From Octopus sinensis (Eukaryota): a stretch of DNA of 64,000 nucleotides. Location: contig NC_042999.1 of assembly GCF_006345805.1 (NCBI RefSeq), forward strand, positions 51,088,001 to 51,152,000. The letters run 5' to 3'. Shown here one piece after another: positions 2,875-62,045 of this stretch. Below the pieces are notes generated by a model, which saw only the letters and a program-made list of their open reading frames with translations, was not told the origin of the DNA and made no database searches. Each line of letters opens with the position of its first letter. Within the stretch, counting starts at the first letter, position 1. The translations under genes were made by a program, and so were the position numbers.

Positions 2875-3535
2875 CGCTAAGCACAAGGCCTGAAATTTTT
2901 AGCGAGAGTGCCAGTCAATTAGATCAACCCCAGTACCCAACTGGTACTTAATTTATAAACCCCGAAAGATGAAAGGCAAAGTCGACCTTGGCAAAATTTG
3001 AACACAGAATATAAAGACAGAAGAAATACCTCTAAGTATTTCACCTGGTATGCTAACGTTTCTTATTTCTTTATTGCTAAACATAGAGGGGACAAACAAG
3101 GACAGACAAAGGGATTAAGTCGATTACATTGACCCCAGTGCATAACTGGTACTGAATTTATCGACCCTGAAAGGATGAAAGGCAAAGTCGACCTCGATGG
3201 AATTTGAACTCAGAACGTAACGGCAGACAAAATACCTATTTCTTTATTACCCACAAGGGGCTAAACATAGAGGGGACAAACAAGGACAGACATAGGTATT
3301 AAGTCGATTACATCGACACCAGTGCGTAGCTGGTACTTAATTTATCGACCCCGAAAGGATGAAAAGCAAAGTCGACCTCGGCAGAATTTGAACTCACAAT
3401 GTTGCGCCAGACGAAATACCGCTAAGCATTTCGCCCGGCACGTTAACGTTTCTGCCAGCTCGCTGCCTTAGTGGCAGACAAAATACCGCTAAGCATTTTG
3501 CCCAGCATGCTAATGTTTCTGCCAGCTCACTGCCT
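2875..3535 (-). mobile_element. SINE family B multimer
   Basis: Three repeats of the core CCCGAAAGGATGAAAGGCAAAGTCGACCTCGGCGGAATTTGAACTCAGAA. The core resembles the MetaSINE/Sauria-type central domain (from memory, unverified). Confidence 0.8.
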
Positions 3536-3781
3536 TTTCAGTGACAATTATTGCAAGATGACTGATATTATTTTGGCCACAAGTTTTATGTCTGAGCATC
3601 GTTCTCCCTAGAAGAGCTACCCACCTCATGGTGTGCTGTGTTCTTGCGCAGAACACACCATTTCACATTGCTCTAGTCCATTCAACTGTACATGAGTTCC
3701 AGCAAAAGCTGGGGAGTTAACCCTGTGACAGATGGCATCTCATTCAGGGTGGGTGAATGGTATAATATCAGTTACTTACAA

Positions 3782-6373: not shown

Positions 6374-7490
6374 AACCACAAAACTACAGACCTATAACCT
6401 GTCTCCCTACAATTTACAAAGCCTTTACTGCAATAATATCGCAGAGATTGAGCGAGCATCTGGAAGAAAACAACCTGTTTCCAGAAGAGCAGAAGATCAA
6501 TAAAGCCATAACTGAAGACAGCTGCTGAAAGAAGAAAGTCCTCAGTATGGCCTGGATCAACTACCAAAAGGCTTTTGATTGTATTCCCCACACGTGGATC
6601 CTTGAAACACTAGCCAAGAACAAGGTAGCACCAATAATTATAAGATTCATAAGACACTCTATGTATAAATGGAAGACAGTGCTACATCTCCAAACAAAAG
6701 AGGGGCTCGTAAAAACTAAAGCTATTCCCATTAGAAGAGGAATATTCCAGGGAGACACGCTCTCTCCACTCCTTTTCTGCTTGGCACTGTCACCTCTATC
6801 TGATATGCTAAATAGAACTGGATGCGGATATAAATGTTATGGCAAAACGATCAGCCACCTTTTATATATGGATGACCTAAAACTATACGCTACAAATGGT
6901 AAACAGCTGAAAACACTACTACAGATTTACCAAAGAAATAGATATGAAATTTGGATTAGAAAAATATGCCGGAGCAACCCTGAAAAGAGGAAAAGTAGTT
7001 AAGAGTAGCAACATCACACTAGATAAAGCCAATGAAATAAGAGAATTAGACCAAAGCCAGACATACAAATATTTAGGAATCAATGAACTAGATACGATAC
7101 AACACACACAAATGAAAAAAATAAAGAAAGAATACTATAGACGAGTTAGATCAATACTGAAAACAGAGCTCAATGCTAAAAACAAGATAATAGGTATTAA
7201 CACTTTAGCCGTCCCAATTATAAGTTACAGCTACAATATCCTTAACTGGACACTAAATGAACTAACCAAAATAGACAAGAAAACAAGAAAATAATGACAG
7301 GATCTAGGATGCACCACCCAAAATCTGACATAGAAAGGCTATATATGCAACGTATAGAAAGTGGTAGAGGCCTTATACAGCTGGAAAACTATTATAAAAT
7401 AACCACCATAGGACTGCAAAAATATCTACTTCAGAAGCAAGGAAAACTAATACAGATAGCTACAAAACACAAGCAAAGCAAAAAACTGGT
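6374..7490 (+). pseudogene. R4/Dong-like non-LTR retrotransposon RT fragment (frameshifted, truncated at both ends)
   Basis: Peptides NYRPITCLPTIYK, AWINYQKAFDCIPH, RGIFQGDTLSPLLFCLAL, HLLYMDDLKLYA, YKYLG and HHPKSDIERLYMQRIESGRGL are typical of R4-clade RT. The 5' junction lies in (AAT)n. Confidence 0.85.
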
Positions 7491-12339: not shown

Positions 12340-14076
12340 TATCCACTCAGTCGAAGTCGACTCTCGGTCACTCATTGGATCAGTGTCCTCCAGTCAGTTC
12401 TATCCTGGGCCGCTTCTTTCAGACTGGCTATGTCCATTCCGGTATCACTCTTGATGGTGTCAAGCCAGTGGGTTCTTGGTCGGCCTCTTCCTCTCTTGCC
12501 ACTGACCATTCCGAGCATGATGTCCTTCTCCAGGGATTTTCTCTGCGTAATATGACTGAAATATGCCAATCTATGCTTGGGGATCCTAGCTTCTAGCGAC
12601 ATTTTCGGCCTGATCTGCTTAAGAACTTCTCCATTGGTGAGCCTCGCTGTCCATGGAATCCGCAAAAGTCTTCTCCAACACCAAAGCTCGAATGCATTAA
12701 TTCTCTTCTGGTCAGCTTTCTTTAGTGTCCAGGTCTCACATCCATATGTTGCTATTGGGAAGACAATTGCATTCACCAATCTGCATTTGGTAGCGAGTCT
12801 GATGTCTCTACTCTTCCAGACCCTGCTCATGCTGACCATTGCCTCTCTGCCTAGAACTATCCGCCATCTTATTTCTGGAGTGCAGTCACCATCTCGATTT
12901 ATTTTGGAGCCAAGGAAGATGAAATCATCAACCACTTCAATCTCTTCATTATCGATCTTGATGCTGATGTTTGTTGTAGCTGCTGTTGACATGATCTTCA
13001 TTTTCTTAACATTGAGGTACAGCCCAAATTTCTCACTCTCTTTCTTGACCAGCAGGACAAGATCCTCCAGATCCTTACCACTCTCCGCCAGCAGGGTTGT
13101 ATCATTTGCATAGCGAAGGTTATTAATATTTCTTCCTCCAATCCTCACTCCAATGCTACTATCCTCCAGGCCTGCATTCCTCGTGACCTTCTCAGCGTAC
13201 ATGTTGAAGGCAGCTGGTGACAGGATGCAACCTTGCCGAGTGCCTTTTCCAATCTCAAACCAATCAGTGTTGCCATATGGTGTCTGTACTGTAGCCTCTT
13301 GGTTTTGATAGAGTGATCTAATAAGCTGGACAAGGTGTAAAGGTGTTCCCATTTCCTCCAGACATTTCCATAACTTGTCATGATCAATGCTGTCAAAGGC
13401 TTTGGAGTAATTGATGAAACACATGTACAGCTTCTTTTGGTATTCTCTTGCCTTTTCCATAATCCACCGTAGGTCGGCGATGTGATCGCGGGTGCCTCTT
13501 CCTTTTCTGAAACCAGCTTGCACCTCTGGCAATTCTCTCTCAATAGTTGTTCAGGCACCTCTGGATGATTTTAAGGAGAATTTTGCTTACATGGGGGATC
13601 AGGGTGATGGTACTGTTGTTTGTGCAGTCCTTGGTATCTCTTTTCTTTGATATTGGGATGAAAACTGACCTCTTCCATTCCCTTGGCCACTTACAGATTC
13701 TCCATATTCGTTGGCAAAGCGATGTTAGTGTTTTTGTTGGTATTGGCTTGAGTAATTCTAGTGGAATATCATCAGTACCTGGAGCTTTTCGGTTGGCCAG
13801 CTGTTTTATTGCCCATACCACCTCATCCTCCAGGATATCTGGCTCCAGTTCCAGTTCCAGTGACTTCTCTTCTGCCTGTTCATTGAGATTGTTCCCTGCA
13901 TACAACTGTACAGTGTACTCTTTCCATCTTTTCCTGATCCCTTCTTGGTCATGTAGTTCTTCACCATTTCTCCCTTGGATGGTTGCTTGTCTGGCCATGA
14001 ATGCTGTACGAGTCTTCTTTACATGTTGGTCTTCTTTACATGTTGGTCTTCTTTACATGTTGGTCTTCTTTACATG
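12340..14076 (-). pseudogene. RTE (BovB-like) LINE, 5'-truncated, with a nearly intact RT region
   Basis: ORFs 13540-13998 and 12372-13532 are joined by a single frameshift near 13545. Motifs: RKAPGTDDIP, QAGFRKGRGTRDHI, YSKAFDSIDH, RQGCILSP, NLRYANDTTL (YADD changed to YAND), FIFLGS, YGCETWT, RGRGRPRTHWLD. Confidence 0.92.
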
Positions 14077-14349: not shown

Positions 14350-14765
14350 CTCTTTACACTTTTACTCTTTTGCTTGTTTCAGTCATTTGACTGTGGCCAT
14401 GATGGAGCACCACCTTTAGTCGAGCAAATCAATCCCAGGACTTACTCTTTATAAGCCTAGTACTTATTCTATCGGTCTCTTTTGCCAAACTGCTAAGTTA
14501 TGGGGAAGTAAACACACCAACATCGGTTGTCAAGCGATGTTGGGGGGACAAACAAAGACACACAAACATATACACACACATACATATATATATACACATA
14601 TACGACGGGCTTCTTTCAGTTTCCGTCTACCAAATCCACTCACAAGGCTTTGGTTGGCCCGAGGCTATAGTAGAAGACACTTGCCCAAGGTGCCACACAG
14701 TGGGACTGAACCCAGAACCATGTGGTTCGTAAGCAAGCTACTTACCACACAGCCACTCCTACGCC
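14350..14765 (-). mobile_element. SINE family A, full length
   Basis: Reverse complement of the head, microsatellite and tail consensus. Confidence 0.85.
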
Positions 14766-19779: not shown

Positions 19780-20635
19780 TCAAATATTAGTTCAACAGTA
19801 TTGATTTTTTGAAAATGAAGTTTCCTTATTACATTTATTTGTTGTTTGTTGAGCTCAAAGTACTTAAAAACATCTTGTGTTCTTTCCTGTCAATGCAGGG
19901 ACGCTTATTTAATATTTAACTGTGAAATTAAAATTAAATTTTATGATTTGGTTGTGTGCTAAGAAGTTTGCTTCCCAACTACATGGTTCTGGGTTCCATT
20001 CCACTCTGTCACAATTTGGACAAGTGTCTTCTAGCATAGCCTCAGACCAACCAAAGCCTTGTGAAAATCGTGAGTGTAGTGGATGCCTATCTGTCTTCGA
20101 TGACAGTCAATTAAAGACCATCATTGATAAAGATCCATGTAAAACCATTTGAGAATTGGCAAAAGAACTTCAAGTTAGCCAGAAAACTACCTGCGATCAG
20201 AAAATCAAGAAAGCTCAACAAATGAGTACCACACGATTTGAATGAAAATCAGAAAATGCGCAGATCGATCCATTTCTCAACCGTAATGTAACTTGCAATG
20301 AAAAGTGGATTCCAGAAGCTGAGAGAACATGGCCAAGAAGTTCTTTCCCACACAGTTTATTCCCCAGACCTTTCTCCGACTGACTACCACTTTTTCAAGC
20401 ACCTTGATGGTTTCCTGTGAGAGAAGGAGTTCAAAAATCAAACTGATGCTGAAAGTGCATTCAAAGAGTTCATCAACTCCAGAACTCCAGATTTTTATGT
20501 TACCAGAATAAACTTGGTAAAAATGTGTTGATTGCAATGGTACTTACTTTGATGGGTAAAATTTCTGCATTGTTGAAATATATCATGATGAATTTCATGT
20601 TTCAAAATGTTGCTTACATTTTACTCAGCCTGATA
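19780..20635 (+). pseudogene. Decayed, internally deleted mariner transposon interrupted by a SINE A head (~19950-20065)
   Basis: Peptides DDSQLKTIIDKDPCKTI*ELAKEL and FKHLDGFL*EKEFKNQTDAESAFKEFINSRTPDFY; TIR-like end TTACATTTTACTCAGCCTGATA. Confidence 0.75.
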
Positions 20636-21819: not shown

Positions 21820-22502
21820 CTTTTACTCTTTTACTTGTTTCAGTCATTTGACTGTGGCCATGCTGGAGCACCGCCTTTGGTCGAGCAAATCGACCTCGGG
21901 ACTTATTCTTTGTAAGGCCAGTACTTATTCTATCGGTCTCTTTTTGCCAAACCACTAAGTTACGAGAACGTAAACACACCAGCATCGGTTGTCAAACGAT
22001 GCTGGGGGAACAAACATAAACACATACATATATATATATATACATACATATATATATTTCTTTACTACCCACAAGGGGCTAAACACAGAGGGGACAAACA
22101 AGGACAGACAAAGGGATTAAGTCGACTACATCGACCCCAGTGCGTAACTGGTACTTAATTTATCGACCCCGAAAGGATGAAAGGCAAAGTCGACCTCGGC
22201 GGAATTTGAACTCGGAACGTAACGACAGACGAAATACGGCTACGAATTTCGCCCAGCGTGCTAACGTTTTTACCAGCTCGCTAACGTTTCTACCAGCGTG
22301 CTAACGTTTCTACCAGCTCGCCGTATATACATACATATATACGACAGGCTTCTTTCAGTTTCTGTCTACCAAATCCGCTCACAAGGCATTGGTCGGCCCG
22401 GGGTTATAGCAGAAGACAATTGCCCAAGATGCCACGCAGTGGGACTGAACCTGGAACCATGTGGTTGGTTAGCAAGCTACTTACCACACAGCCACTCCTG
22501 CG
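21820..22502 (-). mobile_element. SINE family A with a family B copy nested in its microsatellite (~22057-22325)
   Basis: Tail 21820-22030 and head 22340-22502 flank a full family B body. Confidence 0.8.
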
Positions 22503-27981: not shown

Positions 27982-29042
27982 AGGCATAGGAGTGGCTGTG
28001 TGGTAAGTAGCTTGCTTACCACTAAGGCTGCGAGCTGGCAGAATTGTTAGCACGCCGGGCGAAATGCTTTGTGGTATTTCGTCCACCGCTGCATTCTGAG
28101 TTCAAATTCCGCCGAGGTCGACTTTACCTTTCATCCTTTCAGGGTCGATAAATTAAGTACCAGTTACGCACTGGGGTCGATGTAATCGACTTAATCCATT
28201 TGTCTGTACTTGTTTGTCCCCTCTATGTTTAGCCCCTTGTGGGCAATAAAGAAATAGGTATTTCTTCTATGAAAGAAGAGAGAAAAAAAAAAGCCCCTTC
28301 AGTGGGATGTGTGCCACCGGAGGTGGGGCAGTGGGATGTGTGCCACCGAGTGAGAGAGTTGAGGCTCCTCTCAGTGAAGGTAGTGAGGAATGTATGTTCT
28401 GCTATCTCAAGGGAGAGGCTCTCAACAGTTTTGTCGAGAATAAGATGGACAGTCAGATCCTAAAGGAACCGAATTGCATTGACAGCTCAGAGTGGCCTTC
28501 ACAGGTGGCTGCTCTAGTGCTGGAAAGAAAACAATGCAATATGATAATCAACTCATGTGGAGGCGAGATTTTCAGAATTCTCCATTGGAACCCCCAATTT
28601 TGGTGGAAACAGTGCCTGCAAGTTGCACGAGATTTGCTGGGGGAGGAAGTGTAGAGGTTTATTGCCTCTAATTGGTGTATAGACTTTATTTTGATTGTAT
28701 GGACTTTTGGTCCAAGAAATTGTATTTTTTGTAAGAGTTTATGCATTTTTGGAAAAAAAAAAATGTTTTAGAGAAGCAGAGGGTCGCCTTCTGCCTCTCC
28801 CATCTTTATCATTTTTCATCATAATTATCCGCTTCATTAATATTTATGTCTAGCCCGCAAGCTACTCTGTGTAATGCCTTTATGGCAAATTTCTATGAAA
28901 TAAAGTAGCTTGCTTACCAACCACATGGTTCCAGGTTCAGTCCCACTGCGTGGCACCTTGGGCAAGTGTCTTCTACTATAGCCTCGGGCCAAAAAAAACC
29001 TTGTGGGTGGATTTGGTAGACGGAAACTGAAAGAAGCTCGTC

Positions 29043-29094
<52 letters not shown>

Positions 29095-29310
29095 ATATGT
29101 TTGTGTCTGTGTTTGTCCCCCCAACATCGTTTGACAACCTATGCTGGTGTGTTTACGTCCCCGTAACTTAGTGGTTCAGCAAAAGAGACCAATAGAATAA
29201 GTGCTAGGCTTACAAAGAATAAGTCCTGGGGTTGATTTGCTTGACTAAAGACGGTGCTCCAGCATGGCTGCAGTCAAATGACTGAAACAAGTAAAAGAGT
29301 AAGAATATAA
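27982..29310 (+). mobile_element. SINE family A interrupted in its tRNA-like head by an insert (28022-28902) with a 17-bp TSD
   Basis: TSD AAGTAGCTTGCTTACCA at 28005-28021 and 28903-28919. The insert is a SINE B copy (~28023-28260) plus an unclassified retroelement 3' region ending ATGAAATA. Confidence 0.85.
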
Positions 29311-30900: not shown

Positions 30901-31259
30901 ATGATGACGATGATGATGATGATGAGGAGGAGGAGAAGGAGGTGGATGAAGATGATGAGGATGATGATGACGACGACGACGATGATGATGATGATGATGA
31001 TGACGACGACGATGATGATGATGATGATGAAGATGATAACAAGCATGCGTGTGTGATAAGAAGTTTGCTCCCCAACCACATAGTTCTAGGTTCAGTCCCA
31101 CTGTGTGGCACGATGGGCTAGTGTCTTCTAATATAGCTTTGAGCTGACCAAAGCTTTATAAGTGTATTTGTATATGTATATATATATATATATAGGAGAT
31201 AAATAAAAATATATGCATACATACAAACATATATGTACGTACCTACATCTACATGTATA

Positions 31260-37621: not shown

Positions 37622-38041
37622 ACATCATCATCATCATCATCGTTTAACGTCCGTTTTCCATGCTACCATAGGTTGGATGGTTTGACCGTGGTCTGAAAAG
37701 CCAGGGGCTGCACCAGGCTCCAGGCTGATCTGGCAGTGTTTCTACAGCTAGGTGCCCTTCTTAACACCAACCACTCCATGTGTGTTGTGGGTGCTTTTTA
37801 TGTGCCACCAACATAGGTGCCAGGGGAGGCCGGCAATGGCCATGATCGGTTGGTGCTTTTTACATGCCACTGGCACAGAAGCCAGTCAAGGTGTCGCTAG
37901 CATTGGCCTCATTTGGATGGTGCTTTTTACGTGCCACCGACATGGGTATCACAACTACAATTTCCATTTGATTTTTATTTTGATGTTGATGTACTTAACT
38001 CAATAGGTCTACTCAAGTGCAGCAGGTCACCCTACGATAAC
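37622..38041 (-). mobile_element. Family C retroposon, 5'-truncated, fused to U6
   Basis: Family C tail and body on the minus strand, beginning immediately after the U6 3' end. Confidence 0.8.
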
Positions 38042-38129
38042 AATATGGAACGCTTCACGAATTTGCATGTCATCCTTGCACAAGGCCATGCTAATCTTCT
38101 CTGTATCATTCCAATTTTAGAATATGTAC
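38042..38129 (-). pseudogene. U6: U6 snRNA retrocopy lacking the 5' stem-loop (first ~15 nt)
   Basis: Reverse complement GTACATATTCTAAAATTGGAATGATACAGAGAAGATTAGCATGGCCTTGTGCAAGGATGACATGCAAATTCGTGAAGCGTTCCATATT matches U6 (ACAGAGA box, AGC triad). Several changes are CpG-to-TpG. Confidence 0.95.
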
Positions 38130-39624
38130 CCCCATTTCCTTTCCAGAAGAATTGCCCACTGGATTTTTTTGTTCCTGATCATGTTTTTCCTTCAGGCATC
38201 AACCAACAGATATTCAACCTAAACACACACCGCAGTTGACCTCACCTGTCTGGAAGAGCTTATAAAGTTCATGAATTACTACCTCTCCTTTCTCTTCCAA
38301 CCAAATTGTGATAAAAATTATAGTGGTTATAATAAAATCATTCACTATACATTTATGAATAATTATCTAATTTATAGATGTTCCAAATTATAATCAGATC
38401 AAGCAAAAATTAATTTCCATCAAATTATGATAGTTTTTTTTTATAATGATTGAACAGTGTTAAATTAGGCAGAATGAAGGGGAAAAAAAACTTTATTTAA
38501 GTGCTGTAATCAGTGTGGCCACTGTACATTTCTGCCAAGAAATAATTGCATAGCAACTCTGTGAAAAACACCTAATTTTCCTTTGCCTCATAAATGCTGG
38601 ACATCAGATGTCATATATCATAGTATTTTAAATATGTTTATGAAAAACTGAAAATATCTATGCGTTAAAATTACATTTTTTTAATAATTGGCCGAAGTTC
38701 CAGAGTAACTCCAGGGCCAAGATTTTTGTGTGTTGGCACTTATCAAACTGGTTTCTAATCAAGGGTTCATAAATTTATATACTGGTGATAATGGTATACC
38801 CCTGGTTTATTCTGGAACAAATTATTAAAATAGTTATAGCATTACATGTATAATGCATTAAAAAACATGTATATACACATTTTGAGTTCTATTTTCCTGT
38901 TTGCATCACCAACCTTATGTATTAAGTTTATCTAGCTATTTGTTATCTATTTATCTAGCTATTTGTTAACAATTTATCAATTTGTTATCAGTTCTGAAAT
39001 GGCATTATTTTGTTTTTGTTTTATATTTTGTTGGGGGTTTTTTTGTGCTTCCAAAAAAAAAAACATTAAAAACATTTTTGAATTGTTAATGAGAATAAAA
39101 ACAAATCATGTGAAAATTTAAGTAAAGATAGAGTAATTACTGATTTTTTTTCTCTAAATTAATTAAAGATATTCCTAAAACTGTAAACTAGATTAGGATT
39201 CAATGAATAATAAATACATAGTGTTGTGGTTTATCCTTTTAGATCCTATTTAGCATTTATAAATTTATAATAATTTAAATTAATAGACATAGAATCACAC
39301 ATCATTCAATCCAGGTTAGATCTGATTGAACAGATAGTAAAGGGTGTTCCTGCTTATCATCCTCTGTATTTTTGTATATCTAGGATAGCATTATTGTCTA
39401 GTGTATCTTTTTTTTTTTTGTTTAAGATAGTAGGTTGGGACTTGAGGTAATTCAGCTGCTATTTCTGACATGTTAGGCAACCACAAATGAGCTCCATCAA
39501 TCTCATATTAGCTGGAATGACATTGTTGTTAATGCTGTAGTTTAACACCAGTAATCCCTTTTTATCTAACATAAACAGCTTTATATAAAAAATTCCTTAC
39601 CACATATCTATATTCTTTTCTACG

Positions 39625-44906: not shown

Positions 44907-45590
44907 AGGTGTAGGAGTGGCTGTGTGGTTTGTAGCTTGCTTACCAACCACATGGTTCTGAGTTCAGTCCCACTGCATGGCACCTTAGGCAAGTGTCCTC
45001 TGCTATAGCCTTGGGCCGACCAAAGACCCTTGTGAGTGGATTTGGTAGACAGAAACTGAAAGAAGCCCGTCATATATATGTATATATATATATATATATA
45101 TATAGTTAATCCAAAGAAAGCACAAAAAAACACAACAACGCGAGGATGTGGAACAAATATAGTATTATTGGTCGCTCAGGAAAGAAAGAAAGAAGGAGGG
45201 TTTAACATTTCGAGCGGAGCTCTTTGTCGGAAACATAGGAGAAGGAAAGATCCAGAGAAAGGAAGACAGAGGGAAAAAAATCGCCAATGGTACACACGAG
45301 GTCACATTTTGAAAAAAAAAAAAAGGGAAAAAAAATATAATATGTGTGTGTGTGTGTGTGTATGTTTGTGTGTCTGTGTTTGTCCTCCCAACATCACTTG
45401 ACAACCGATGCTGGTGTGTTTACGTCCACGTAACTTAGCGGTTCAGCAAAAGGGACCGATAGAATAAGTACTAAGCTTACAAAGAATAAGTCCTGGCGTC
45501 GACTTGCTTGGCTAAAGGTGGTGCTCCAGCATGGCCATGGTCAAATGACTAAAACAAATAAAAGAGTAAAAGAGTTAAGGAGTAAAGAGT
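44907..45590 (+). mobile_element. SINE family A split by a Penelope-type terminal fragment (~45110-45310)
   Basis: Head 44907-45070 and tail ~45350-45590. Confidence 0.78.
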
Positions 45591-45629
45591 AAATCACATA
45601 ATTGAAATCTTAAAGCTACATGATAATGC

Positions 45630-46085
45630 ATGGTTACAGCCTCGTCTGGCACCTGTGTCGGTGGCACATAAAAAAACACCATCCGAGCGTGGTCGTCTGC
45701 TAGCCTTGTCTGGCACCTGTGTCGGTGGCACATAAAAACACCATCCGAGCGTGGCCGTTCGTCAGCCTCGTCTGGCACCTGTGTCGGTGGCACATAAAAA
45801 CACCATCCGAGCGTGGTCGTCTGCCAGCCTTGTCTGGCACCTGTGTCGGTGGCACATAAAAACACCATCCGAGCGTGGCCGTTCGCCAGCCTCGTCTGGC
45901 ACCTGTGTCGGTGGCACATAAAATCACCCACTACACTCTCGGAGTGGTTGGCGTTAGGAAGGGCATCCAGCTGTAGAAACACTGCCAGATCTGACTGGCC
46001 TGGTGCAGCCTTCGGGCTCCCCAGACACCAGTTGAACCGTCCAACCCATGCTAGCATGGAAAGCGGACGTTAAATGATGATGATG
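45630..46085 (+). mobile_element. Family C retroposon with ~5 tandem 62-bp subrepeats
   Basis: GTGGCACATAAAA recurs at ~45661, 45725, 45787, 45849 and 45911. Confidence 0.88.
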
Positions 46086-47971: not shown

Positions 47972-48149
47972 GTCATCTTTTAACATTGACATCACCATTG
48001 TCATCATCATCATCATCATCATCGTCATCATCACACCATTATCATCATCATAGTCATCATCATTATAATCAACACCATTTTTGCTGTAATTATCATTATC
48101 ATCAACATCATTAACATTATCATCATCATCATCATCATCATCATCATTA

Positions 48150-48730
48150 CCTATTTCCTTACTACCCACAGGGGGCTAAACACAGAGCGGACAAACAGAT
48201 TAAGTCGATTATATCGACCCCAGTGCGTAACTGGTACTTATTTAATCAACCCCGAAAGGATGAAAGGCAAAGTCGACCTCGGCGGAATTTGAACTCAGAA
48301 TGTAACGGCAGACAAAATACCTATTTCTTTACTACCCACAAGGGGCTAGACACAGAGAGGACAAACAAGGACAGACAAATGGATTAAGTTGATTATATCG
48401 ACCCTAGTGCGTAACTGGTACTTATTTAATTGACCCCGAAAGGATGAAAGGCAAAGTCGACCTCGGCGGAATTTGAACTCAGAATGTAACGGCAGACAAA
48501 ATACCTATTTCTTTACTACCCACAAGGGGCTAGACACAGAGAGGACAAACAAGGACAGACAAATGGATTAAGTTGATTATATCGACCCTAGTGCGTAACT
48601 GGTACTTAATTTATCGACCCCGAAAGGATGAAAGGCAAAGTCGACCTCAGCAGAATTTGAACTCAGAACGTAACGGCAGACGAAATACCGCTCAGCATTT
48701 TGCCCGGCGTGCTAACGTTTCTGCCAGCTC
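48150..48730 (-). mobile_element. SINE family B trimer (~184-bp units)
   Basis: Repeated junction CGGCAGACAAAATACCTATTTCTTTACTACCCACAAGG at ~48306 and ~48490. Confidence 0.88.
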
Positions 48731-50959: not shown

Positions 50960-53370
50960 TTTGGCACAAGGTTCATAATTTTGAGAAGAGGGGGTTAGTC
51001 AATTACATCGACCCCAGTACTTGACTGGTAGATTGACCCCAAAAGGAAGAATGGCAAAGTTCACTTCAGCAGCATTTGAACCAAGAAAGTAATGTCTCAA
51101 AAGCGGCGAGCTGGCAGAAACTGTAGCACGCTGGACGAAATGCTTAGTAGTATTTTGCCTGCCATTACATTCTGAGTTCAAATTCCGCCAAGGTCAACTT
51201 TGCCTTTTATCCTTTCAGGGTCGATAAATTAAGTACCAGTTATGCACTGGGGTTGATGTAATCGACTAAATCCCTTTGTCTGTCCTTGTTTGTCCCCTCT
51301 ATGTTTAGCCCCTTGTGGGCAATAAAGAAATAAGAAGGTAATGTCTCAAAATGTTTTATCCAGTACATTAAAGATTATACCAGCTCACCAACTTAATGTA
51401 ATACTGGTTTCAGATTTTTGGACAAGGCCAGCAATTTCAGGATTACATTGACCCTGGTGTACAACTGGTACTAATTGTATCAATCACCTAAAAGGGGAAA
51501 AACAAAGTTGACCTTGGGGAAATTTAAACTCAGATCATAATGACAGACAAAATGCCACTAAGCAGTTTGAGCAGCTTGCCATCTTACTTTAAAGTAATAT
51601 TGATTTCAAATTCTAGCACAAGAGGGTTCAAGGCAATTACATTGACCCCAGTGCTGAAGTGGTACTTATTTTATGGACCTCTGAAAGGATGAAAGCTAAG
51701 GTTAACCTTGGCAGAATTTGAACTCAGAACATAAAGATGAATGAAATATTGCTAAGCATTTTGACAGGCATGCTAACAATTCTGCCAGCTTGCTACTTTA
51801 CTTTAACCATTTAGCATTTAAAATGGCTATATCCAGCCCGAATATTATTCTTGTTTTTGTGTTCAAACTAGCCAGATCCTGCCTCTCACACCTATGCTAC
51901 AATGTCATTCTAAAGATAAACAATCACATCATCAAAATTTCAAAGCTGCAATATAATGTATGATTAATTTAAAACATAGAAAAAGCTGAATGTCAAAGGC
52001 TTAAAGTAATATCAAAATAAAGAATAAAAAGTTTTGAATGGTACAACAATGCACTATAATACAGACAATGGACTATATACCTATTGTAATTTAGTCATCC
52101 ATAGTCTGATATGATATTTTGGAATGATATTCCTTCTTCAGATATTCTTAGACAGAGTCGCTGTTATAATCGGTTTTCTAATGGTTTTCTTTTTTTATTT
52201 ATTGGAAGCATCTCAGCAGTGGTCTCATGATGCTTTTTCCGGAATTCCTCATGAGAAGTGTGTGAGGTTGGCCATGTCTCAATCTCGTGTGTGCTGGTAC
52301 TTCCGTAGTACTGCTTATAAGTTACGTATTATACGTGCAGCTTCTTTTTTTTTCTCCCAGGAAAGGCTGTGTGGTAAGTATCTTGCTTACGAACCACATG
52401 GTTCCGGGTTCAGTCTCACTGCATTGCACCTTGGGCAAGTGTCTTCTACTATAGCCTCGGGTCGACCAAAGCCTTGTGAGTGGATTTGGTAGATGGAAAC
52501 TGAAAGAGGCCCGTCATATATATGTATATATATGTGCGTGTGTATGTGTTTGTGTGTCTGTGTTTGTCCCCCGAACATCGCTTGACAACCGATGCTGGTG
52601 TGTTTATGTCCCTGTCACTTAACGGTTCAGCAAAAGGGACCAATAGGATAAGTACTAGGCTTACAAAGAATAAGTCCTGGCATCGATTTGCTCGACTAAA
52701 GGCAGTGCTCCAGCATGGCCATGGTCAAATGACTGAAACAAGTAAAAGAGTAAAAGAGCAAAAGAATATTAAAATAATGATTTCAAATTTTGGCATAGAG
52801 CCAGCTTTTGAAGGGATAGCAAAGTCAATTACATTGACCCCAGTATTCAACTGGTATTTATTTTATCAACTCTGAAAAGATGAAAGGCAAAGTCAACCTC
52901 AGCGGAATTTGAACTCAGGACATAGAATAAAGATGGGTAAAATGCTGGTAAGCATTTTGCCTGGCATGCTAATAAATTCTGCCTACTCACCTCTTCACTC
53001 AAGAGTAAAATGAAATAATGGTTTCAAATTTTGTCTCAGGACCAACAGTTTTTGAGAGGATGGAGAAGTCGATTATATCAACCCCATTGCTCAACTGGTA
53101 CTTATTTTATCAACCCTGAAAGGATGAAAGGCAAAACTGGACAAAATGCAACTAAGCATTTCAGCCAGATCACCACCTTCAATAATGGTTTTAAATTTTG
53201 ACACAGGGCAACAGTTTTTGAGGGGAGGGTAAGTCGATCACATTGACTCCAGTACTTGACCAGTACTTATTTTATCAATACTAAAAGGATGAAAGGCAAA
53301 GTCAACCTCAGCAGAATTTGAACTCAGAACATAAAGACAGACAAAATGCTATTCAGTGTTTTGCCTGGCA
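50960..53370. mobile_element. Dense cluster of SINE family B copies with a SINE A at ~52362-52765
   Basis: Repeated GAAAGGCAAAGTC/GACTTTGCCTTTC cores in both orientations. Confidence 0.7.
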
Positions 53371-53384
53371 TTCTTTTACTTTTC

Positions 53385-53936
53385 CTTTTATTCTTTTACT
53401 TGTTTCAGTCACTTGGCTGCAGCCATGCTGGAGCTCCAACTGAAGGAGTTTTTAGTTGAAGAAATTGACCCCAAGACTTATTCTTTGTAAGCCTAGTATA
53501 TTCTATCGGTTTTTCTTTTTGTCAAACTGCTAAGTTGTGGGGATGTAAACGCACCAACATTGGTTGTCAAGTGATGGTCAAGCAACAGAAAGACACACAT
53601 AAATATATATACATAAGTACATACAGTAAGTAGCTTACTTACCAGCCACATGATTCTGGGTTCAGTCCCACTGCATGGCACTTTGGGCTTCTACTATAGC
53701 CAACCAAAGCCTTGTGGGTGGATTTGGAAGACAGAAACTGAAAGAAGCCCATCGTGTGTGTGTCTGTGTTTGTCCCCACCACTATTGCTTGACAACATTC
53801 CCCCGTAACTTAGCAGTTCAGCAAAAGAGACTGATAGAATAAGTACTAGGCTTACAAAGAATATATCTTGGGGTTGATTTGTTTGACTAGGTGGTGTTCC
53901 AGCATAGCTGCAGTCAAATGACTGAAACAAATAAAA

Positions 53937-54032: not shown

Positions 54033-54649
54033 CACACACACATACATATAAGTGGGATGACCACTACGTGGCCAACCCTTATGCTAGAAGTAGATCTGCT
54101 ATGGTCTTAACACAAAGAAAGGAATGTTCTCAAACGACAGGCTTCTTTCAGTTTCCATCTATCAAATCCACTTTCAAGGCTTTGGTCAGCCAGAGGCTAT
54201 AGTAGATGACACTTACCCAACATGTCACACAGTAGGACTGAACCTGGAACCATGTGGTTGGGAAGCAAGCTTCTTACCACACAGTCACACCTGCACCTAT
54301 AATGTTAACAATTCTGCCAGCTTGCTACCTTACTTTAAAGTAATACTGAAATAATACAAACAGACAATGGATGTGCCAGTTATGGTTTTAATGGTTAAGC
54401 AAAGAGACAGATGTCTAAATTTAAACCAGTAACAAGGTATTGTCTGATTATATTATTTCGATATTATTTTGATATCTTGTCATTTTATTATCACATTATA
54501 TTTTCACACTGTCAATAATATAATTATTTTATTATATTCTCACACTTTGAAAAATAATATAATTATTATATTATTGTTTAATTGTCTCACATTGTTGTAA
54601 ACAACTTACAAAAGCAGCAACTCAATACACAATATAAAACATGTTGATC

Positions 54650-55540: not shown

Positions 55541-55936
55541 GAATCATTGGATGTATCAGCTACTCACTTTCACATCACTGATTACGTCTTGTAATTTTTA
55601 TTGTTCAATCCTCTTCATAATCTCAGTTCCTAGAATAACATACAAGTAAATGTGCAAGCAAGATTCTACATGTTAAACTTAAACACGACAGCACAACAAT
55701 GCGTTTTGGCATAAAACAATCTCATTATACAAAAATTGTAGTAAATTAGAAGCAATCATTTATAATTAGAAACAATTTTAAGGAAGTTGTTTTAAAGTAA
55801 ATTAGAAAACAACAGGCTTTCTTCTAATTAGTGTAATTGTTTCTAAAATAAACACAAGGCCTGAAATTTGTGAAGATGGAGTGAATTGAAACCATCGACT
55901 CCAGCACTAGGCAACTACTTTGCTTTATCAATGCAG

Positions 55937-56540
55937 AAGTGTTTGTGTGGTAAGAAGCTTTCTTCCTGGAGGACTCCTACAGATTTATGTCTGTGTGGTC
56001 TGGTCTGGAACCGAGTACATGCTTCAATGAAGCAAGGAGACTGGTCGGCCGGATAACTTGAACTTTTGGACTCAAAAAAGAGTCTACAAAATGTGAAATA
56101 TGTGACTTTTGTGTAATGTACGAGGTTTATAGCCTCATTGTGTTTTAAAAAAGAAAAAAAAAGAAAGAATTCTGAACATTGTGTTTTTTATGTAAGAGGT
56201 TTGTTGCCTCATTGTGTTTTCGGGAAAAAGGAAAAAAGAACATTGTTTTAGAGAAGCGAAAGTCAGCGGGCGCTTTTCGTCTTCTCCCATCCTTATCATC
56301 CTTGCATCATTATCATTCATCCCATAAATGTCTGTGTCCAGCCCGCAAAGCTTCTATCTGTGTGATGCCCTTGTGGCAAATTAAATGAAATAAAGAAGCT
56401 TTCTTCCCAGGCACATGGTGGTTCTGAGTTCACTCCCACTGTCTTCTAATTGGGCAAGAGTCTTCTGCTATTGGCCCTTAGGCTGACCAAAGCCCTTGTG
56501 AGTGGATTTGGTAGACAAAAACTGTAAGAAGCCCATTGTA
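55937..56540 (+). mobile_element. SINE family A (different subfamily) interrupted in its head by an insert (55967-56392) with a 15-bp TSD
   Basis: TSD AAGAAGCTTTCTTCC at 55952-55966 and 56393-56407. The insert 3' end is homologous to ~28770-28902 and ends ATGAAATA. Confidence 0.85.
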
Positions 56541-61444: not shown

Positions 61445-62045
61445 ATATACGACGGGCTTCTTTCAGTTTCTGTCTACCAAATCCACTCACAAGGCTTTGG
61501 TCGGCCTGAGGCTATTGTACAAGACACTTGCCCAAGGTGCCACGCAGTGGGACTGAACCCGGAACCATGTGGTTGGTAAGCAAGCTACTTACCACACCTT
61601 TTTCTTTTATTCTTTTACTTGTTTCAGTCATTTGACTGCAGCCATGCTGGAGCACCGTCTTTAGTCAAGCAAATCAACCCCAGGACTTATTCTTTGGAAC
61701 CCTAGTACTTATTCTATCAGCCTCTTTTGCCGAACCACTAAGTTACAGGGACGTAAACACACCAGCATCAGTTGTCAAGTGATGTTGGCCGGACAAACAC
61801 AGACACACAAACATATACACACACACATACATCATATATATATATATATATACATGTATATATATATATACATATATATACAACAGGCTTCTTTCAGTTT
61901 GTGTCTACCAAATCCACTCACAAGGCTTTGGTCGGCCCGAGGCTATAGTAGAAGACACTTGCCCAAGGTGCCATGCAGTGGGACTGAACCTGGAATCATG
62001 TGGCTGGTAAGCAAGCTACTTACCACGCAGCTACTCCTGCACCTA
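61445..62045 (-). mobile_element. SINE A head plus a full SINE A copy in tandem
   Basis: ~61445-61597 and ~61600-62045. Confidence 0.82.

What the first reader, a model, noticed from the sequence alone, without database searches (positions are those of the whole stretch)
27982..28919. Candidate SINE/tRNA-targeting site-specific retroelement, copy 1 (same insertion nucleotide as 55937-56407)
Seen: an unclassified insert splits a family A SINE immediately after the A-box ..GTGTGGT, with a 17-bp TSD (AAGTAGCTTGCTTACCA, 28005-28021 and 28903-28919). A second, clearly diverged relative 27 kb away sits at the identical position of a different SINE A subfamily. The two inserts share 3' motifs (GAGGTTTAT.GCCTC, GTTTAGAGAAGC, TCTCCCATC.TTATCAT, AGCCCGCAA..GCT, TGGCAAATT..ATGAAATA), and their AATAAA runs into the TSD. 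Known: long TSDs and a terminal AATAAA fit non-LTR retrotransposition, and Tx1-clade L1 elements are often target-specific (Dewa near tRNA genes, Keno in U2 snRNA, Tx1/Tx2 in transposons). Inference: this is a family that targets the anticodon-arm region of an abundant SINE head, or of its parent tRNA - a retrotransposon parasitising a SINE. No ORF here allows a clade assignment.
Basis: partly seen in the sequence, partly recalled or inferred. Interest (0 to 1): 0.88.

Follow-up and report, generated by a model that had tools for sequence, protein, structure and literature searches.

The report
Retroposon that homes into a SINE
Two independent copies of an unclassified retroposon tail sit at exactly the same nucleotide of an abundant cephalopod SINE, and the tail carries a 10-base stretch complementary to that target, so the family probably inserts site-specifically into another mobile element, though only two copies could be examined.

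Summary
Two inserts (28022-28902 and 55967-56392) split SINE A copies at the same column, right after GTGTGGT. Both lie in SINE orientation and have perfect 17-bp and 15-bp target-site duplications (TSDs).

They are independent events. The TSDs carry subfamily-specific bases of two different SINE A subfamilies. The 5' ends, second-nick positions and outer flanks also differ.

New findings:
1. The first 235 bp of insert 1 is a full-length SINE B, co-inserted as a template-switch chimera.
2. Both tails end in the hairpin and GAAATA terminus of the SINE B group, which inserts at varied sites and gives similar 14-19 bp TSDs. There is no poly(A).
3. Each tail holds a 9-10 nt segment, 36-37 nt from its end, that is the reverse complement of TSD positions 2-11. 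One compensatory change tracks the SINE A subfamily.

Best reading: 5'-truncated copies of a site-specific non-LTR retroposon that integrates by target-primed reverse transcription. This is the kind known from Tx1-clade LINEs that target other transposons.

No RT or endonuclease ORF is present, so no clade can be assigned. No cephalopod genome was reachable, so the specificity rests on two copies.

The parts
27982..28004 (+). Head of host SINE A copy 1 up to the insertion point (..GGCTGTGTGGT; A-box-like motif TGGCTGTGTGG)
   Evidence: Aligns with the 5' ends of 13 other SINE A copies
28005..28021 (+). 5' copy of the 17-bp target-site duplication AAGTAGCTTGCTTACCA
   Evidence: Exact direct repeat with 28903-28919. 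It is single-copy in all intact SINE A copies
28022..28256 (+). Full-length SINE B abutting the 5' TSD. It is the co-inserted 5' partner of a chimeric retrocopy
   Evidence: 88-90% identical to SINE B copies at 3230-3474, 51100-51332 and 48499-48730. Its 5' end coincides with the SINE B 5' end, and no TSD of its own flanks it
28257..28293 (+). Linker: GGTATTTC (the restart seen at unit junctions of SINE B tandem arrays), then TTCTATGAAAGAAGAGAG, then A10. Probably the 3' end of the SINE B-type RNA onto which the RT jumped
   Evidence: repeats D3 and D4
28294..28654 (+). Unique body of insert 1, with an open frame (ATG ORF 28307-28654, 115 aa) whose stop codon abuts the conserved tail
   Evidence: No Pfam family. 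No homologue (both hits are tandem-repeat proteins). No similarity to insert 2
28655..28902 (+). Conserved 3' tail of X, copy 1
   Evidence: Alignment with 56124-56392. Semi-global alignment to the SINE B 3' end reached by 7/1000 shuffles
28857..28866 (+). Anti-target segment GCAAGCTACT, the reverse complement of TSD positions 2-11 (AGTAGCTTGC). It lies 36 nt from the element's 3' end
   Evidence: inverted repeat I1. 38/5000 mononucleotide and 17/3000 dinucleotide shuffles reach 10 nt. Tail plus flank folds into this stem at -20.5 kcal/mol, z = -3.7
28875..28887 (+). Terminal hairpin TGCC-TTTAT-GGCA
   Evidence: Same position and loop as the CTTGT hairpin of all SINE B-type tails in the window. 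Stems co-vary
28897..28902 (+). 3' terminus GAAATA, with no poly(A). The following AAG is shared with the target
   Evidence: SINE B copies end in the same GAAATA
28903..28919 (+). 3' copy of the 17-bp TSD
28920..29305 (+). Remainder of host SINE A copy 1: B-box-like region and body to 29043, internal (TA)n, then the 205-bp 3' unit at 29102-29305
55930..55951 (+). Head of host SINE A copy 2 (old, diverged subfamily) up to GTGTGGT
55952..55966 (+). 5' copy of the 15-bp TSD AAGAAGCTTTCTTCC
   Evidence: A4 and C14 are shared with the old-subfamily copies 54134-54302, 31050-31170 and 19949-20063
55967..56392 (+). Insert X copy 2. It is 5'-truncated or all UTR, has no ORF, and has an internal 74-bp-spaced duplication (56116-56162 / 56190-56236)
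56347..56355 (+). Anti-target segment AAAGCTTCT, the reverse complement of its own TSD positions 2-10 (AGAAGCTTT). It lies 37 nt from the 3' end
   Evidence: 71/3000 dinucleotide shuffles. Same fold topology as copy 1
56366..56378 (+). Terminal hairpin TGCC-CTTGT-GGCA
56387..56392 (+). 3' terminus GAAATA
56393..56407 (+). 3' copy of the 15-bp TSD
56408..56540 (+). Remainder of host SINE A copy 2

Best explanation
X is the 3' part of a non-LTR retroposon family. It may be the 3' end of a LINE or a LINE-dependent non-autonomous element. [quoted passage not shown]

Proposed steps:
1. The bottom strand is nicked opposite GTGTGGT^AAG, 3 nt after the A-box-like motif.
2. The freed 3' end (...GCTACTT-3') primes cDNA synthesis at the RNA terminus ...GAAAUA(AAG). 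No poly(A) is involved.
3. The top strand is cut 15-17 nt downstream, which produces the TSD.
4. Reverse transcription ends prematurely in copy 2. In copy 1 it jumps from the X RNA onto the 3' end of a SINE B RNA and copies that to its 5' end.

The RT recognises a 3' hairpin (4-bp stem, CTTGT loop) placed 14-15 nt before a GAAATA terminus. SINE B carries the same module.

X's site fidelity is not shared by SINE B. It most probably comes from a 10-nt segment of the X tail complementary to target positions 24-33 of SINE A. That segment could pair with the displaced top strand at the target. Alternatively it could pair with downstream SINE A sequence carried on a read-through X transcript.

Shown: the anatomy, the independence of the two events, the shared tail module, and the complementarity.
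Inferred: TPRT, the order of nicks, the template jump, and any role for the complementarity.
For: Same column and same orientation in two SINE A copies; every other SINE A copy covering the site is intact there. Second-hit chance is about 1e-4.

Independence:
- The TSDs differ at three positions, each mirrored in both copies of its own TSD. A4 and C14 are diagnostic of an older SINE A subfamily.
- TSD lengths are 17 and 15 bp.
- The 5' ends are unrelated.
- Homology stops at the SINE borders.
- The host SINEs are 6% and 23% diverged from the young consensus.

Age: 32 TSD pairs without a mismatch bound post-insertion decay to about 4.6% or less per site. The tails differ by 25%. The two source lineages had therefore already diverged and kept the same site.

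TPRT-type machinery:
- There are no LTRs or terminal inverted repeats (TIRs), and no poly(A).
- SINE B-type elements in the window have TSDs of 14-19 bp.
- The shared hairpin plus GAAATA terminus shows compensatory stem changes in 3 of 4 pairs across 8 tails.
- The X tails align to the SINE B 3' end (7/1000 and 0/1000 shuffles).

Chimera: a full-length SINE B abuts the 5' TSD with no TSD of its own.

Anti-target segment:
- 10/10 and 9/9 complementarity to each copy's own TSD, at homologous tail positions 36 and 37 nt from the end.
- One A:T to T:A compensatory change matches the SINE A subfamily difference at TSD position 4.
- The same long-range stem is predicted for both copies.

Precedent:
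- Tx1-clade LINEs target specific positions of other transposons and give 16-bp TSDs (PMC4494074).
- Target flank carried on the RNA raises R2Ol integration (PMC6530143).
Against: - Only two copies exist, both in one 64-kb window. No genome-wide flank census was possible.
- No RT or endonuclease ORF was found. The 115-aa ORF has no homologue and is not shared by copy 2, so 'LINE 3' end' is unproven.
- SINE B uses the same tail module yet inserts at varied sites. If the machinery is shared, its endonuclease is not site-specific, and everything then hangs on the 10-nt complementarity.
- That complementarity was noticed post hoc and has moderate support (p about 0.006 for X1; X2 is not independent).
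- Given that the two guide variants exist, their matching the right SINE subfamilies by chance has p about 0.2.
- The X2 stem is weak (z = -0.9).
- The hairpins were selected for pairing, so the 100% paired figure is partly circular.
Confidence: 0.7

Rival explanations
1. Protein-only specificity. X is the 3' end of a dedicated site-specific LINE, for example Tx1-like or R1-like, whose endonuclease recognises GTGTGGT^AAGWAGCTT. The 10-nt complementarity is chance or has no role in targeting.
For: All characterised APE-type site-specific LINEs owe their specificity mainly to the endonuclease (PMC4494074 citing Takahashi and Fujiwara). The first nick is identical and the second variable (17 versus 15 bp), as expected for a specific first nick. 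An ORF ends exactly where the conserved tail starts in copy 1.
Against: No endonuclease or RT is present to test. The tail module is shared with SINE B, which is not site-specific. The complementarity is unlikely by chance (17/3000) and is kept, with a compensatory change, across 25% tail divergence.
Confidence: 0.3
2. Hotspot coincidence. The GGT^AAG site of SINE A is simply a good site for a loosely specific endonuclease (TSDs of related SINEs start AGAAAG, TAGGTA, ATAAAT). Because SINE A is so abundant, two X copies landed there without any X-specific targeting.
For: TSD starts of SINE B-type elements are A/G-rich, like AAGTAG and AAGAAG. One SINE A copy (53626) is 5'-truncated at this very position.
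Against: None of the roughly 20 SINE B-type copies in the window sits at this site, while 2 of 2 X copies do. The second hit has p about 1e-4. The anti-target segment is unexplained under this reading.
Confidence: 0.07
3. One ancestral SINE A::X chimera spread by segmental duplication, by retrotransposition of the composite, or by gene conversion between SINE A copies.
For: Same site and same orientation. The alignment runs uninterrupted from the X tail into SINE A at about 74% identity.
Against: - TSD differences are mirrored within each locus and follow SINE A subfamilies.
- TSD lengths differ.
- The 5' parts are unrelated.
- There is no homology outside the SINE.
- Host copy 1 is 94% identical to the young consensus, while host copy 2 is 77%.
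- A duplication as old as host 2, with at least 9.5% private changes, would keep 15/15 identity with p of about 0.05 or less.
Confidence: 0.03
4. RNA-level chimera. X RNA anneals through its 10-nt segment to abundant SINE A RNA. An RT copying SINE A RNA switches to the tethered X 3' end at position 23 and later switches back, so the composite was born as a new SINE A copy rather than by insertion into SINE A DNA.
For: The segment is complementary to sense SINE A, so it could pair with SINE A RNA as well as with DNA. Template switching clearly occurs in this system, as the SINE B-X1 chimera shows. SINE A copy 53626 starts at the same position.
Against: - It needs two switches, with a 15-17 nt re-copy, to have happened twice.
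- The 15-17 bp repeat fits the normal 14-19 bp TSD range of this machinery.
- The perfect TSD in a 23%-diverged host argues that the insert is younger than its host.
Confidence: 0.05
5. Processed pseudogene of a host mRNA whose 3' UTR ends in AATAAA.
For: There is a terminal AATAAA, and an ORF upstream in copy 1.
Against: There is no poly(A) tail. The ORF has no homologue among 1.8 billion representative proteins. The tail has the SINE B-type hairpin terminus. Both copies sit at the same site.
Confidence: 0.02

Closest known systems
Tx1-clade target-specific LINEs (Tx1L in the Tx1D transposon; Tx1-Mar and SINEU-3 in Mariner-N4_AMi; Keno in U2 snRNA genes) - PMC4494074
   Same: A retroposon family that inserts at one position and orientation of another repeat family. 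TSDs are of similar size (16 bp reported for SINEU-3). 5'-truncated copies are common, and template-switch 5' extensions occur.
   Different: The target here is a SINE head, and I found no report of that target. No ORF2 is available, so clade membership is untested. The tail is a hairpin plus GAAATA module shared with non-specific SINEs, and it contains a segment complementary to the target.
R2/R1-type rDNA-specific LINEs that use read-through target flank on the RNA (R2Ol, PMC6530143)
   Same: Site-specific TPRT. Base pairing between the element's transcript and the target is known to raise efficiency and precision. There is no poly(A).
   Different: In R2 and R1 the pairing involves downstream flank carried on a read-through RNA that anneals to the primer strand. 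Here the complementary segment is internal, 36-37 nt inside the element, and has the polarity of the primer strand. R2 uses a restriction-like endonuclease and gives little or no TSD.
Stringent-type LINE/SINE pairs that share a 3' stem-loop (Kajikawa and Okada 2002, as cited in PMC4494074; my own knowledge for UnaL2/UnaSINE1)
   Same: There is a conserved 3' hairpin a fixed distance from a short terminal motif, shared between different retroposon families in one genome. The stems co-vary.
   Different: The partner LINE is not identified here. X adds site specificity that the SINE B partners lack.
U6/L1 chimeric retrocopies formed by template switching (my own knowledge; Buzdin and colleagues)
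   Same: A full-length small pol III-type RNA copy is fused to the 5' end of a 5'-truncated retroposon, and the whole is flanked by one TSD. That is the architecture of 28022-28902.
   Different: The small RNA here is a SINE (SINE B) with an A-rich 3' extension, and the machinery is not L1/poly(A)-type.
Group II intron retrohoming with EBS/IBS pairing (my own knowledge)
   Same: This would be the nearest analogy if the 10-nt segment pairs with the sense strand of the DNA target next to the bottom-strand cut.
   Different: There is no ribozyme (Rfam searches negative), no splicing and a different enzyme class. It is a functional analogy only.

Membership tests
Sequence-specific non-LTR retrotransposons (general) | Independent copies at the same nucleotide and orientation of a repeated target | tested here: met
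   2 of 2 copies. Independence is shown by subfamily-specific TSDs, different TSD lengths and unrelated 5' ends. n = 2 only.
Sequence-specific non-LTR retrotransposons (general) | Most or all genomic copies share the target | not testable with these tools
   No cephalopod genome is present in the searchable DNA collections. The protein database holds no octopus TE ORFs.
Non-LTR retrotransposon / TPRT product | Variable 5' truncation, TSD of about 10-20 bp, defined 3' end, no LTRs or TIRs | tested here: met
   TSDs of 17 and 15 bp, different 5' ends, a common 3' terminus GAAATA, and no terminal repeats.
Tx1 clade (L1 superfamily) LINE | ORF2 with APE and RT domains that group with Tx1 in a phylogeny | not testable with these tools
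   No RT or endonuclease sequence lies in either insert. The 115-aa ORF has no Pfam match and no homologue.
L1-type retrocopy / processed pseudogene | 3' poly(A) tail | tested here: not met
   The element ends ...ATGAAATA and runs directly into the TSD in both copies.
SINE B-group 'CTTGT-hairpin' tail family (stringent-type 3' module of this genome) | A 4-bp stem with CTTGT loop, 12-17 nt before a GAA(A)ATA terminus, and TSDs of 14-19 bp | tested here: met
   X1 has TGCC-TTTAT-GGCA plus 15 nt. X2 has TGCC-CTTGT-GGCA plus 14 nt. 3 of 4 stem pairs co-vary across 8 tails. The tails align to the SINE B 3' end. Caveat: the hairpins were found by a search that required pairing.
tRNA-gene-targeting elements (Dewa, Dictyostelium TRE, Ty3) | Insertion in or at a fixed distance from genuine tRNA genes | not tested
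   The window has no tRNA gene. SINE A itself is not recognised as a tRNA by ARAGORN or the Rfam tRNA model.
LTR retrotransposon / TRIM, or DNA transposon | LTRs with 4-6 bp TSD, or TIRs with a short fixed TSD | tested here: not met
   There are no terminal direct or inverted repeats in the insert, and the TSDs are 15-17 bp.
Ribozyme-bearing retroelements (Penelope-like, retrozymes, R2 HDV-like, group II) | A recognisable ribozyme | tested here: not met
   No Rfam hit reaches significance in or around either insert.

The most novel reading that the evidence does not exclude
The site specificity is encoded in the retroposon RNA, not in a dedicated endonuclease. A 10-nt 'anti-target' segment sits 36-37 nt from the 3' end and is absent from the otherwise homologous, non-specific SINE B tail. 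It pairs with SINE A positions 24-33. The pairing could be with the displaced top strand at the target, forming an R-loop that frees the primer strand and sets the second nick just beyond it. Alternatively it could be with read-through SINE A flank. Either way, a non-specific LINE machinery would be steered to one nucleotide, and the segment would co-evolve with SINE A subfamilies. That would be RNA-guided homing by a eukaryotic non-LTR retroposon.
Probability: 0.22. Interest if true: 0.88.

Novelty: new member of a known kind. Interest (0 to 1): 0.55.

Why it matters
LINE families that target one position of another repeat are known. A family that targets an abundant SINE head would be a new target class. 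It would also mark nested parasitism in the SINE-rich cephalopod genomes and offer a safe-harbour strategy for the element.

The more consequential point is the 10-nt target-complementary segment. It sits in a tail that otherwise matches the tails of non-specific SINEs. If it determines site choice, target selection by a non-LTR retroposon would be programmable by RNA. That is relevant to how TPRT enzymes find their sites and to retroelement-based insertion tools.

A genome-wide census could test this directly. It would show whether guide variants track target variants.

Tried and rejected
- Homology of the 115-aa ORF: Pfam gave nothing. The word-indexed search gave nothing. The exhaustive HMMER search gave only two tandem-repeat proteins, rejected as artefacts.
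- A census through the protein database, using the minus-strand ORF that spans the SINE A/X junction: one Argonauta hians hit, covering the SINE A part only. Its 20-kb locus L001 has a partial SINE A and no X.
- Sampling octopus loci through RT homologues of the window's LINE: the best hits are vertebrate BovB-type RTs, with no cephalopod entries.
- Exact-pattern scans for the X tail and for SINE A in metagenome, prokaryote-genome and viral collections: zero hits.
- Sequence strings in the paper library and in the supplements of the octopus LINE paper: none.
- Ribozyme, tRNA or other RNA family in or around the inserts: none.
- A partner LINE in the window: the RT at 12372-13532(-) is RTE/BovB-like with a different, microsatellite 3' end. 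The RT fragment at 6547-7002 is truncated.
- A 'U-like' CTGTGTRAT motif next to the anti-target segment resembles the 9 nt upstream of the site. I rejected it as target-derived, because it aligns as a duplicated TATGTYTAG module of the SINE B-type tail.
- The 9-mer CTGTGTGGT in the 5' part of X2 (55992-56000) was considered as a trace of co-transcription. It is not followed by the expected TSD sequence, so I treated it as chance.
- Consensus folding of the two tails alone gave nothing beyond the small hairpin.

Full report
**Setting**

The window is SINE-dense animal DNA.

The only database relative of a SINE A translation is a hypothetical protein of the octopod Argonauta hians. Its locus carries an 87%-identical SINE A fragment. 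I therefore infer an octopod cephalopod, species unknown.

It consists of a 170-bp head and body, an internal (TA)n, and a 205-bp 3' unit. It has A-box-like (TGGCTGTGTGG) and B-box-like (GGTTCAGTCCC) motifs. Neither ARAGORN nor the Rfam tRNA model calls it a tRNA.

**Observation**

Copy 1 has AAGTAGCTTGCTTACCA at 28005-28021 and 28903-28919, around an 881-bp insert. Copy 2 has AAGAAGCTTTCTTCC at 55952-55966 and 56393-56407, around a 426-bp insert.

I aligned both reconstructed empty sites with 18 other SINE A copies. Both duplications begin at the same column, right after GTGTGGT, and every other copy that covers the site is continuous there. Both inserts lie in the orientation of the SINE.

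The inserts share only their 3' ends. These are 75% identical over about 160 bp, with looser GAGGTTTAT.GCCTC modules further upstream. Nothing upstream of that is similar at DNA or protein level. The tail has no third copy in the window.

With about 15 such sites in 128 kb of two-stranded sequence, a second random hit at a homologous site has p about 1e-4.

**Independence of the two events**

- The two TSDs differ at three positions, and each difference is mirrored in both halves of its own TSD. Two of them (A4, C14) are shared with other old-subfamily SINE A copies (54134, 31050, 19949). Each TSD therefore copies its own host.
- TSD length differs (17 versus 15 bp). The first nick is the same and the second is 2 nt apart.
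- Homology ends at the SINE borders.
- Host 1 is 6% diverged from the young consensus. Host 2 is 23% diverged, with 9.5% private changes.
- A duplication as old as host 2 would stay 15/15 identical with p of about 0.05 or less. The insert is therefore probably younger than its host.
- No mismatch in 32 TSD pairs limits post-insertion decay to about 4.6% or less per site. The tails differ by 25%. The two source lineages were thus already diverged and still used the same nucleotide.

This excludes one amplified chimera, segmental duplication and gene conversion as simple explanations.

**What the insert is**

1. *A co-inserted SINE B.* 28022-28256 is a complete SINE B whose 5' end abuts the 5' TSD. 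It is followed by GGTATTTC, the restart seen at unit junctions of SINE B tandem arrays, and then by an A-rich stretch (28257-28293). No TSD flanks the SINE B, so it entered together with X. This is the architecture of template-switch chimeras such as U6/L1 (my own knowledge).

2. *A tail module shared with the SINE B group.* Both X tails end in a 4-bp hairpin, 14-15 nt of spacer, and the terminus GAAATA, with no poly(A). The hairpins are TGCC-TTTAT-GGCA and TGCC-CTTGT-GGCA. Every SINE B-type family in the window has the same CTTGT-loop hairpin 12-17 nt before a GAA(A)ATA end, with different but complementary stems. Three of four pairs show double changes. The hairpins were found by a pairing filter, so the 100% paired figure is not independent evidence. 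The X tails align to the SINE B 3' end better than shuffles do (7/1000 and 0/1000). Where TSDs of these SINEs can be read, they are 14-19 bp. X therefore uses the same kind of retrotransposition machinery as SINE B, although SINE B sits at varied sites.

3. *An anti-target segment.* The only inverted repeat reported around copy 1 pairs 28857-28866 (GCAAGCTACT) with TSD positions 2-11 (AGTAGCTTGC).
   - In copy 2 the homologous tail position reads AAAGCTTCT, the complement of its own TSD positions 2-10.
   - Such runs arise in 17/3000 (X1) and 71/3000 (X2) dinucleotide shuffles.
   - The segments lie 36 and 37 nt from the element end.
   - The X1/X2 difference GCT[A]CT versus GCT[T]CT pairs with the host difference AAG[T]AGC versus AAG[A]AGC.
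   - Without a 1-nt insertion, the X2 segment would match the old-subfamily consensus 10/10.
   - Folding tail plus flank gives the same long-range stem around the small hairpin in both copies. X1 gives -20.5 kcal/mol at z = -3.7. X2 is weak at z = -0.9.
   - Relative to the SINE B tail, this segment lies in an X-specific stretch between duplicated tail modules.

**What could not be shown**

- Neither insert has an RT or endonuclease.
- The 115-aa ORF that stops exactly at the start of the conserved tail has no Pfam family and no genuine homologue. It is absent from copy 2.
- The two RT fragments in the window belong to other LINEs.
- No cephalopod genome is reachable with these tools.

Family-wide specificity, the autonomous partner and its clade therefore remain open.

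**Mechanism**

The best-supported account is TPRT at a fixed first nick (bottom strand opposite GGT^AAG) with a variable second nick 15-17 nt downstream. Reverse transcription starts at the hairpin-marked, non-polyadenylated 3' end. It is followed by 5' truncation in copy 2, or by an end-to-end template jump onto a SINE B RNA in copy 1.

The source of specificity is either a dedicated endonuclease, as in Tx1/R1-type LINEs (PMC4494074), or RNA-target complementarity. The second option has partial precedent: target flank carried on the RNA boosts R2Ol integration (PMC6530143). An internal anti-target segment, however, has no precedent that I could find.

I give about 0.7 to a site-specific retroposon family. 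Within that, I split roughly evenly between protein-determined and RNA-assisted specificity.

**Comparison and novelty**

In kind this matches target-specific non-LTR retrotransposons that home into other repeats. Examples are Tx1L in Tx1D, and Tx1-Mar and SINEU-3 in Mariner-N4_AMi with 16-bp TSDs. Membership in the Tx1 clade is untested.

It differs in three ways: the target is a SINE head, the tail is a stringent hairpin shared with non-specific SINEs, and the tail contains the target-complementary segment.

I file it as a new member of a known kind. There is a minority chance of something more unusual, namely RNA-guided site choice.

Noticed in passing
window 38039-38138 (-): Full-length U6 snRNA match (Rfam RF00026, 83 bits, E = 1e-19). 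I did not check whether it is a gene or a retrocopy.
   Followed up: no
window 12372-13532 (-): A 386-aa RT ORF (Pfam RVT_1, E = 1e-26). Its best database relatives are vertebrate BovB/RTE-type RTs (Bos, Podarcis, Varanus) at 57-66% identity. This is an RTE/BovB-like LINE in a cephalopod. Its 3' end runs into (GA)n/(GATA)n repeats and is unrelated to the X tail.
   Followed up: partly
window 48148-48730 (-) and 3076-3536 (-): SINE B occurs as head-to-tail arrays. Each unit's GAAATA end is joined to an internal position (GGTATTTTGTCTGCC...) of the next unit. The same 8-nt restart follows the SINE B inside insert 1 (28257-28264).
   Followed up: partly
window 53626-53755 (+): This SINE A copy is 5'-truncated exactly at TAAGTAGC, the same position where X inserts. 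It is preceded by TA-rich microsatellite. This could be chance (about 2/170 per truncated copy) or a preferred RT stop or break point.
   Followed up: partly
window 29044-29305 and 11 other loci (e.g. 14353-14562, 61607-61807): SINE A is a composite of about 400 bp: a 170-bp head and body, an internal (TA/TG)n microsatellite, and a conserved 205-bp 3' unit. SINE B 22055-22281(-) is inserted in that microsatellite in one copy.
   Followed up: partly
window 28300-28319 and 28329-28348: A perfect 20-nt direct repeat, CAGTGGGATGTGTGCCACCG, spaced 29 nt apart at the start of the unique body of insert 1.
   Followed up: no
window 56116-56162 and 56190-56236: Internal duplication in the tail of insert 2 (47 nt, 79% identity, 74-nt spacing), including the GAGGTTTRT.GCCTC motif. 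The tail evolves by module duplication.
   Followed up: partly
window 45700-45870 (+): A tandem unit of about 124 bp (CGTGGTCGTCTGC.AGCCTTGTCTGGCACCTGTGTCGGTGGCACATAAAAACACC...) inside a 160-aa minus-strand ORF (45575-46057). It has no Pfam hit and was not identified.
   Followed up: no
window 10474, 10876 (+): Another SINE subfamily carries exactly the X-type hairpin (TGCC-CTTGT-GGCA) followed by AAAATTTGAAACC and (ATT)n. This is the closest tail relative of X in the window.
   Followed up: partly
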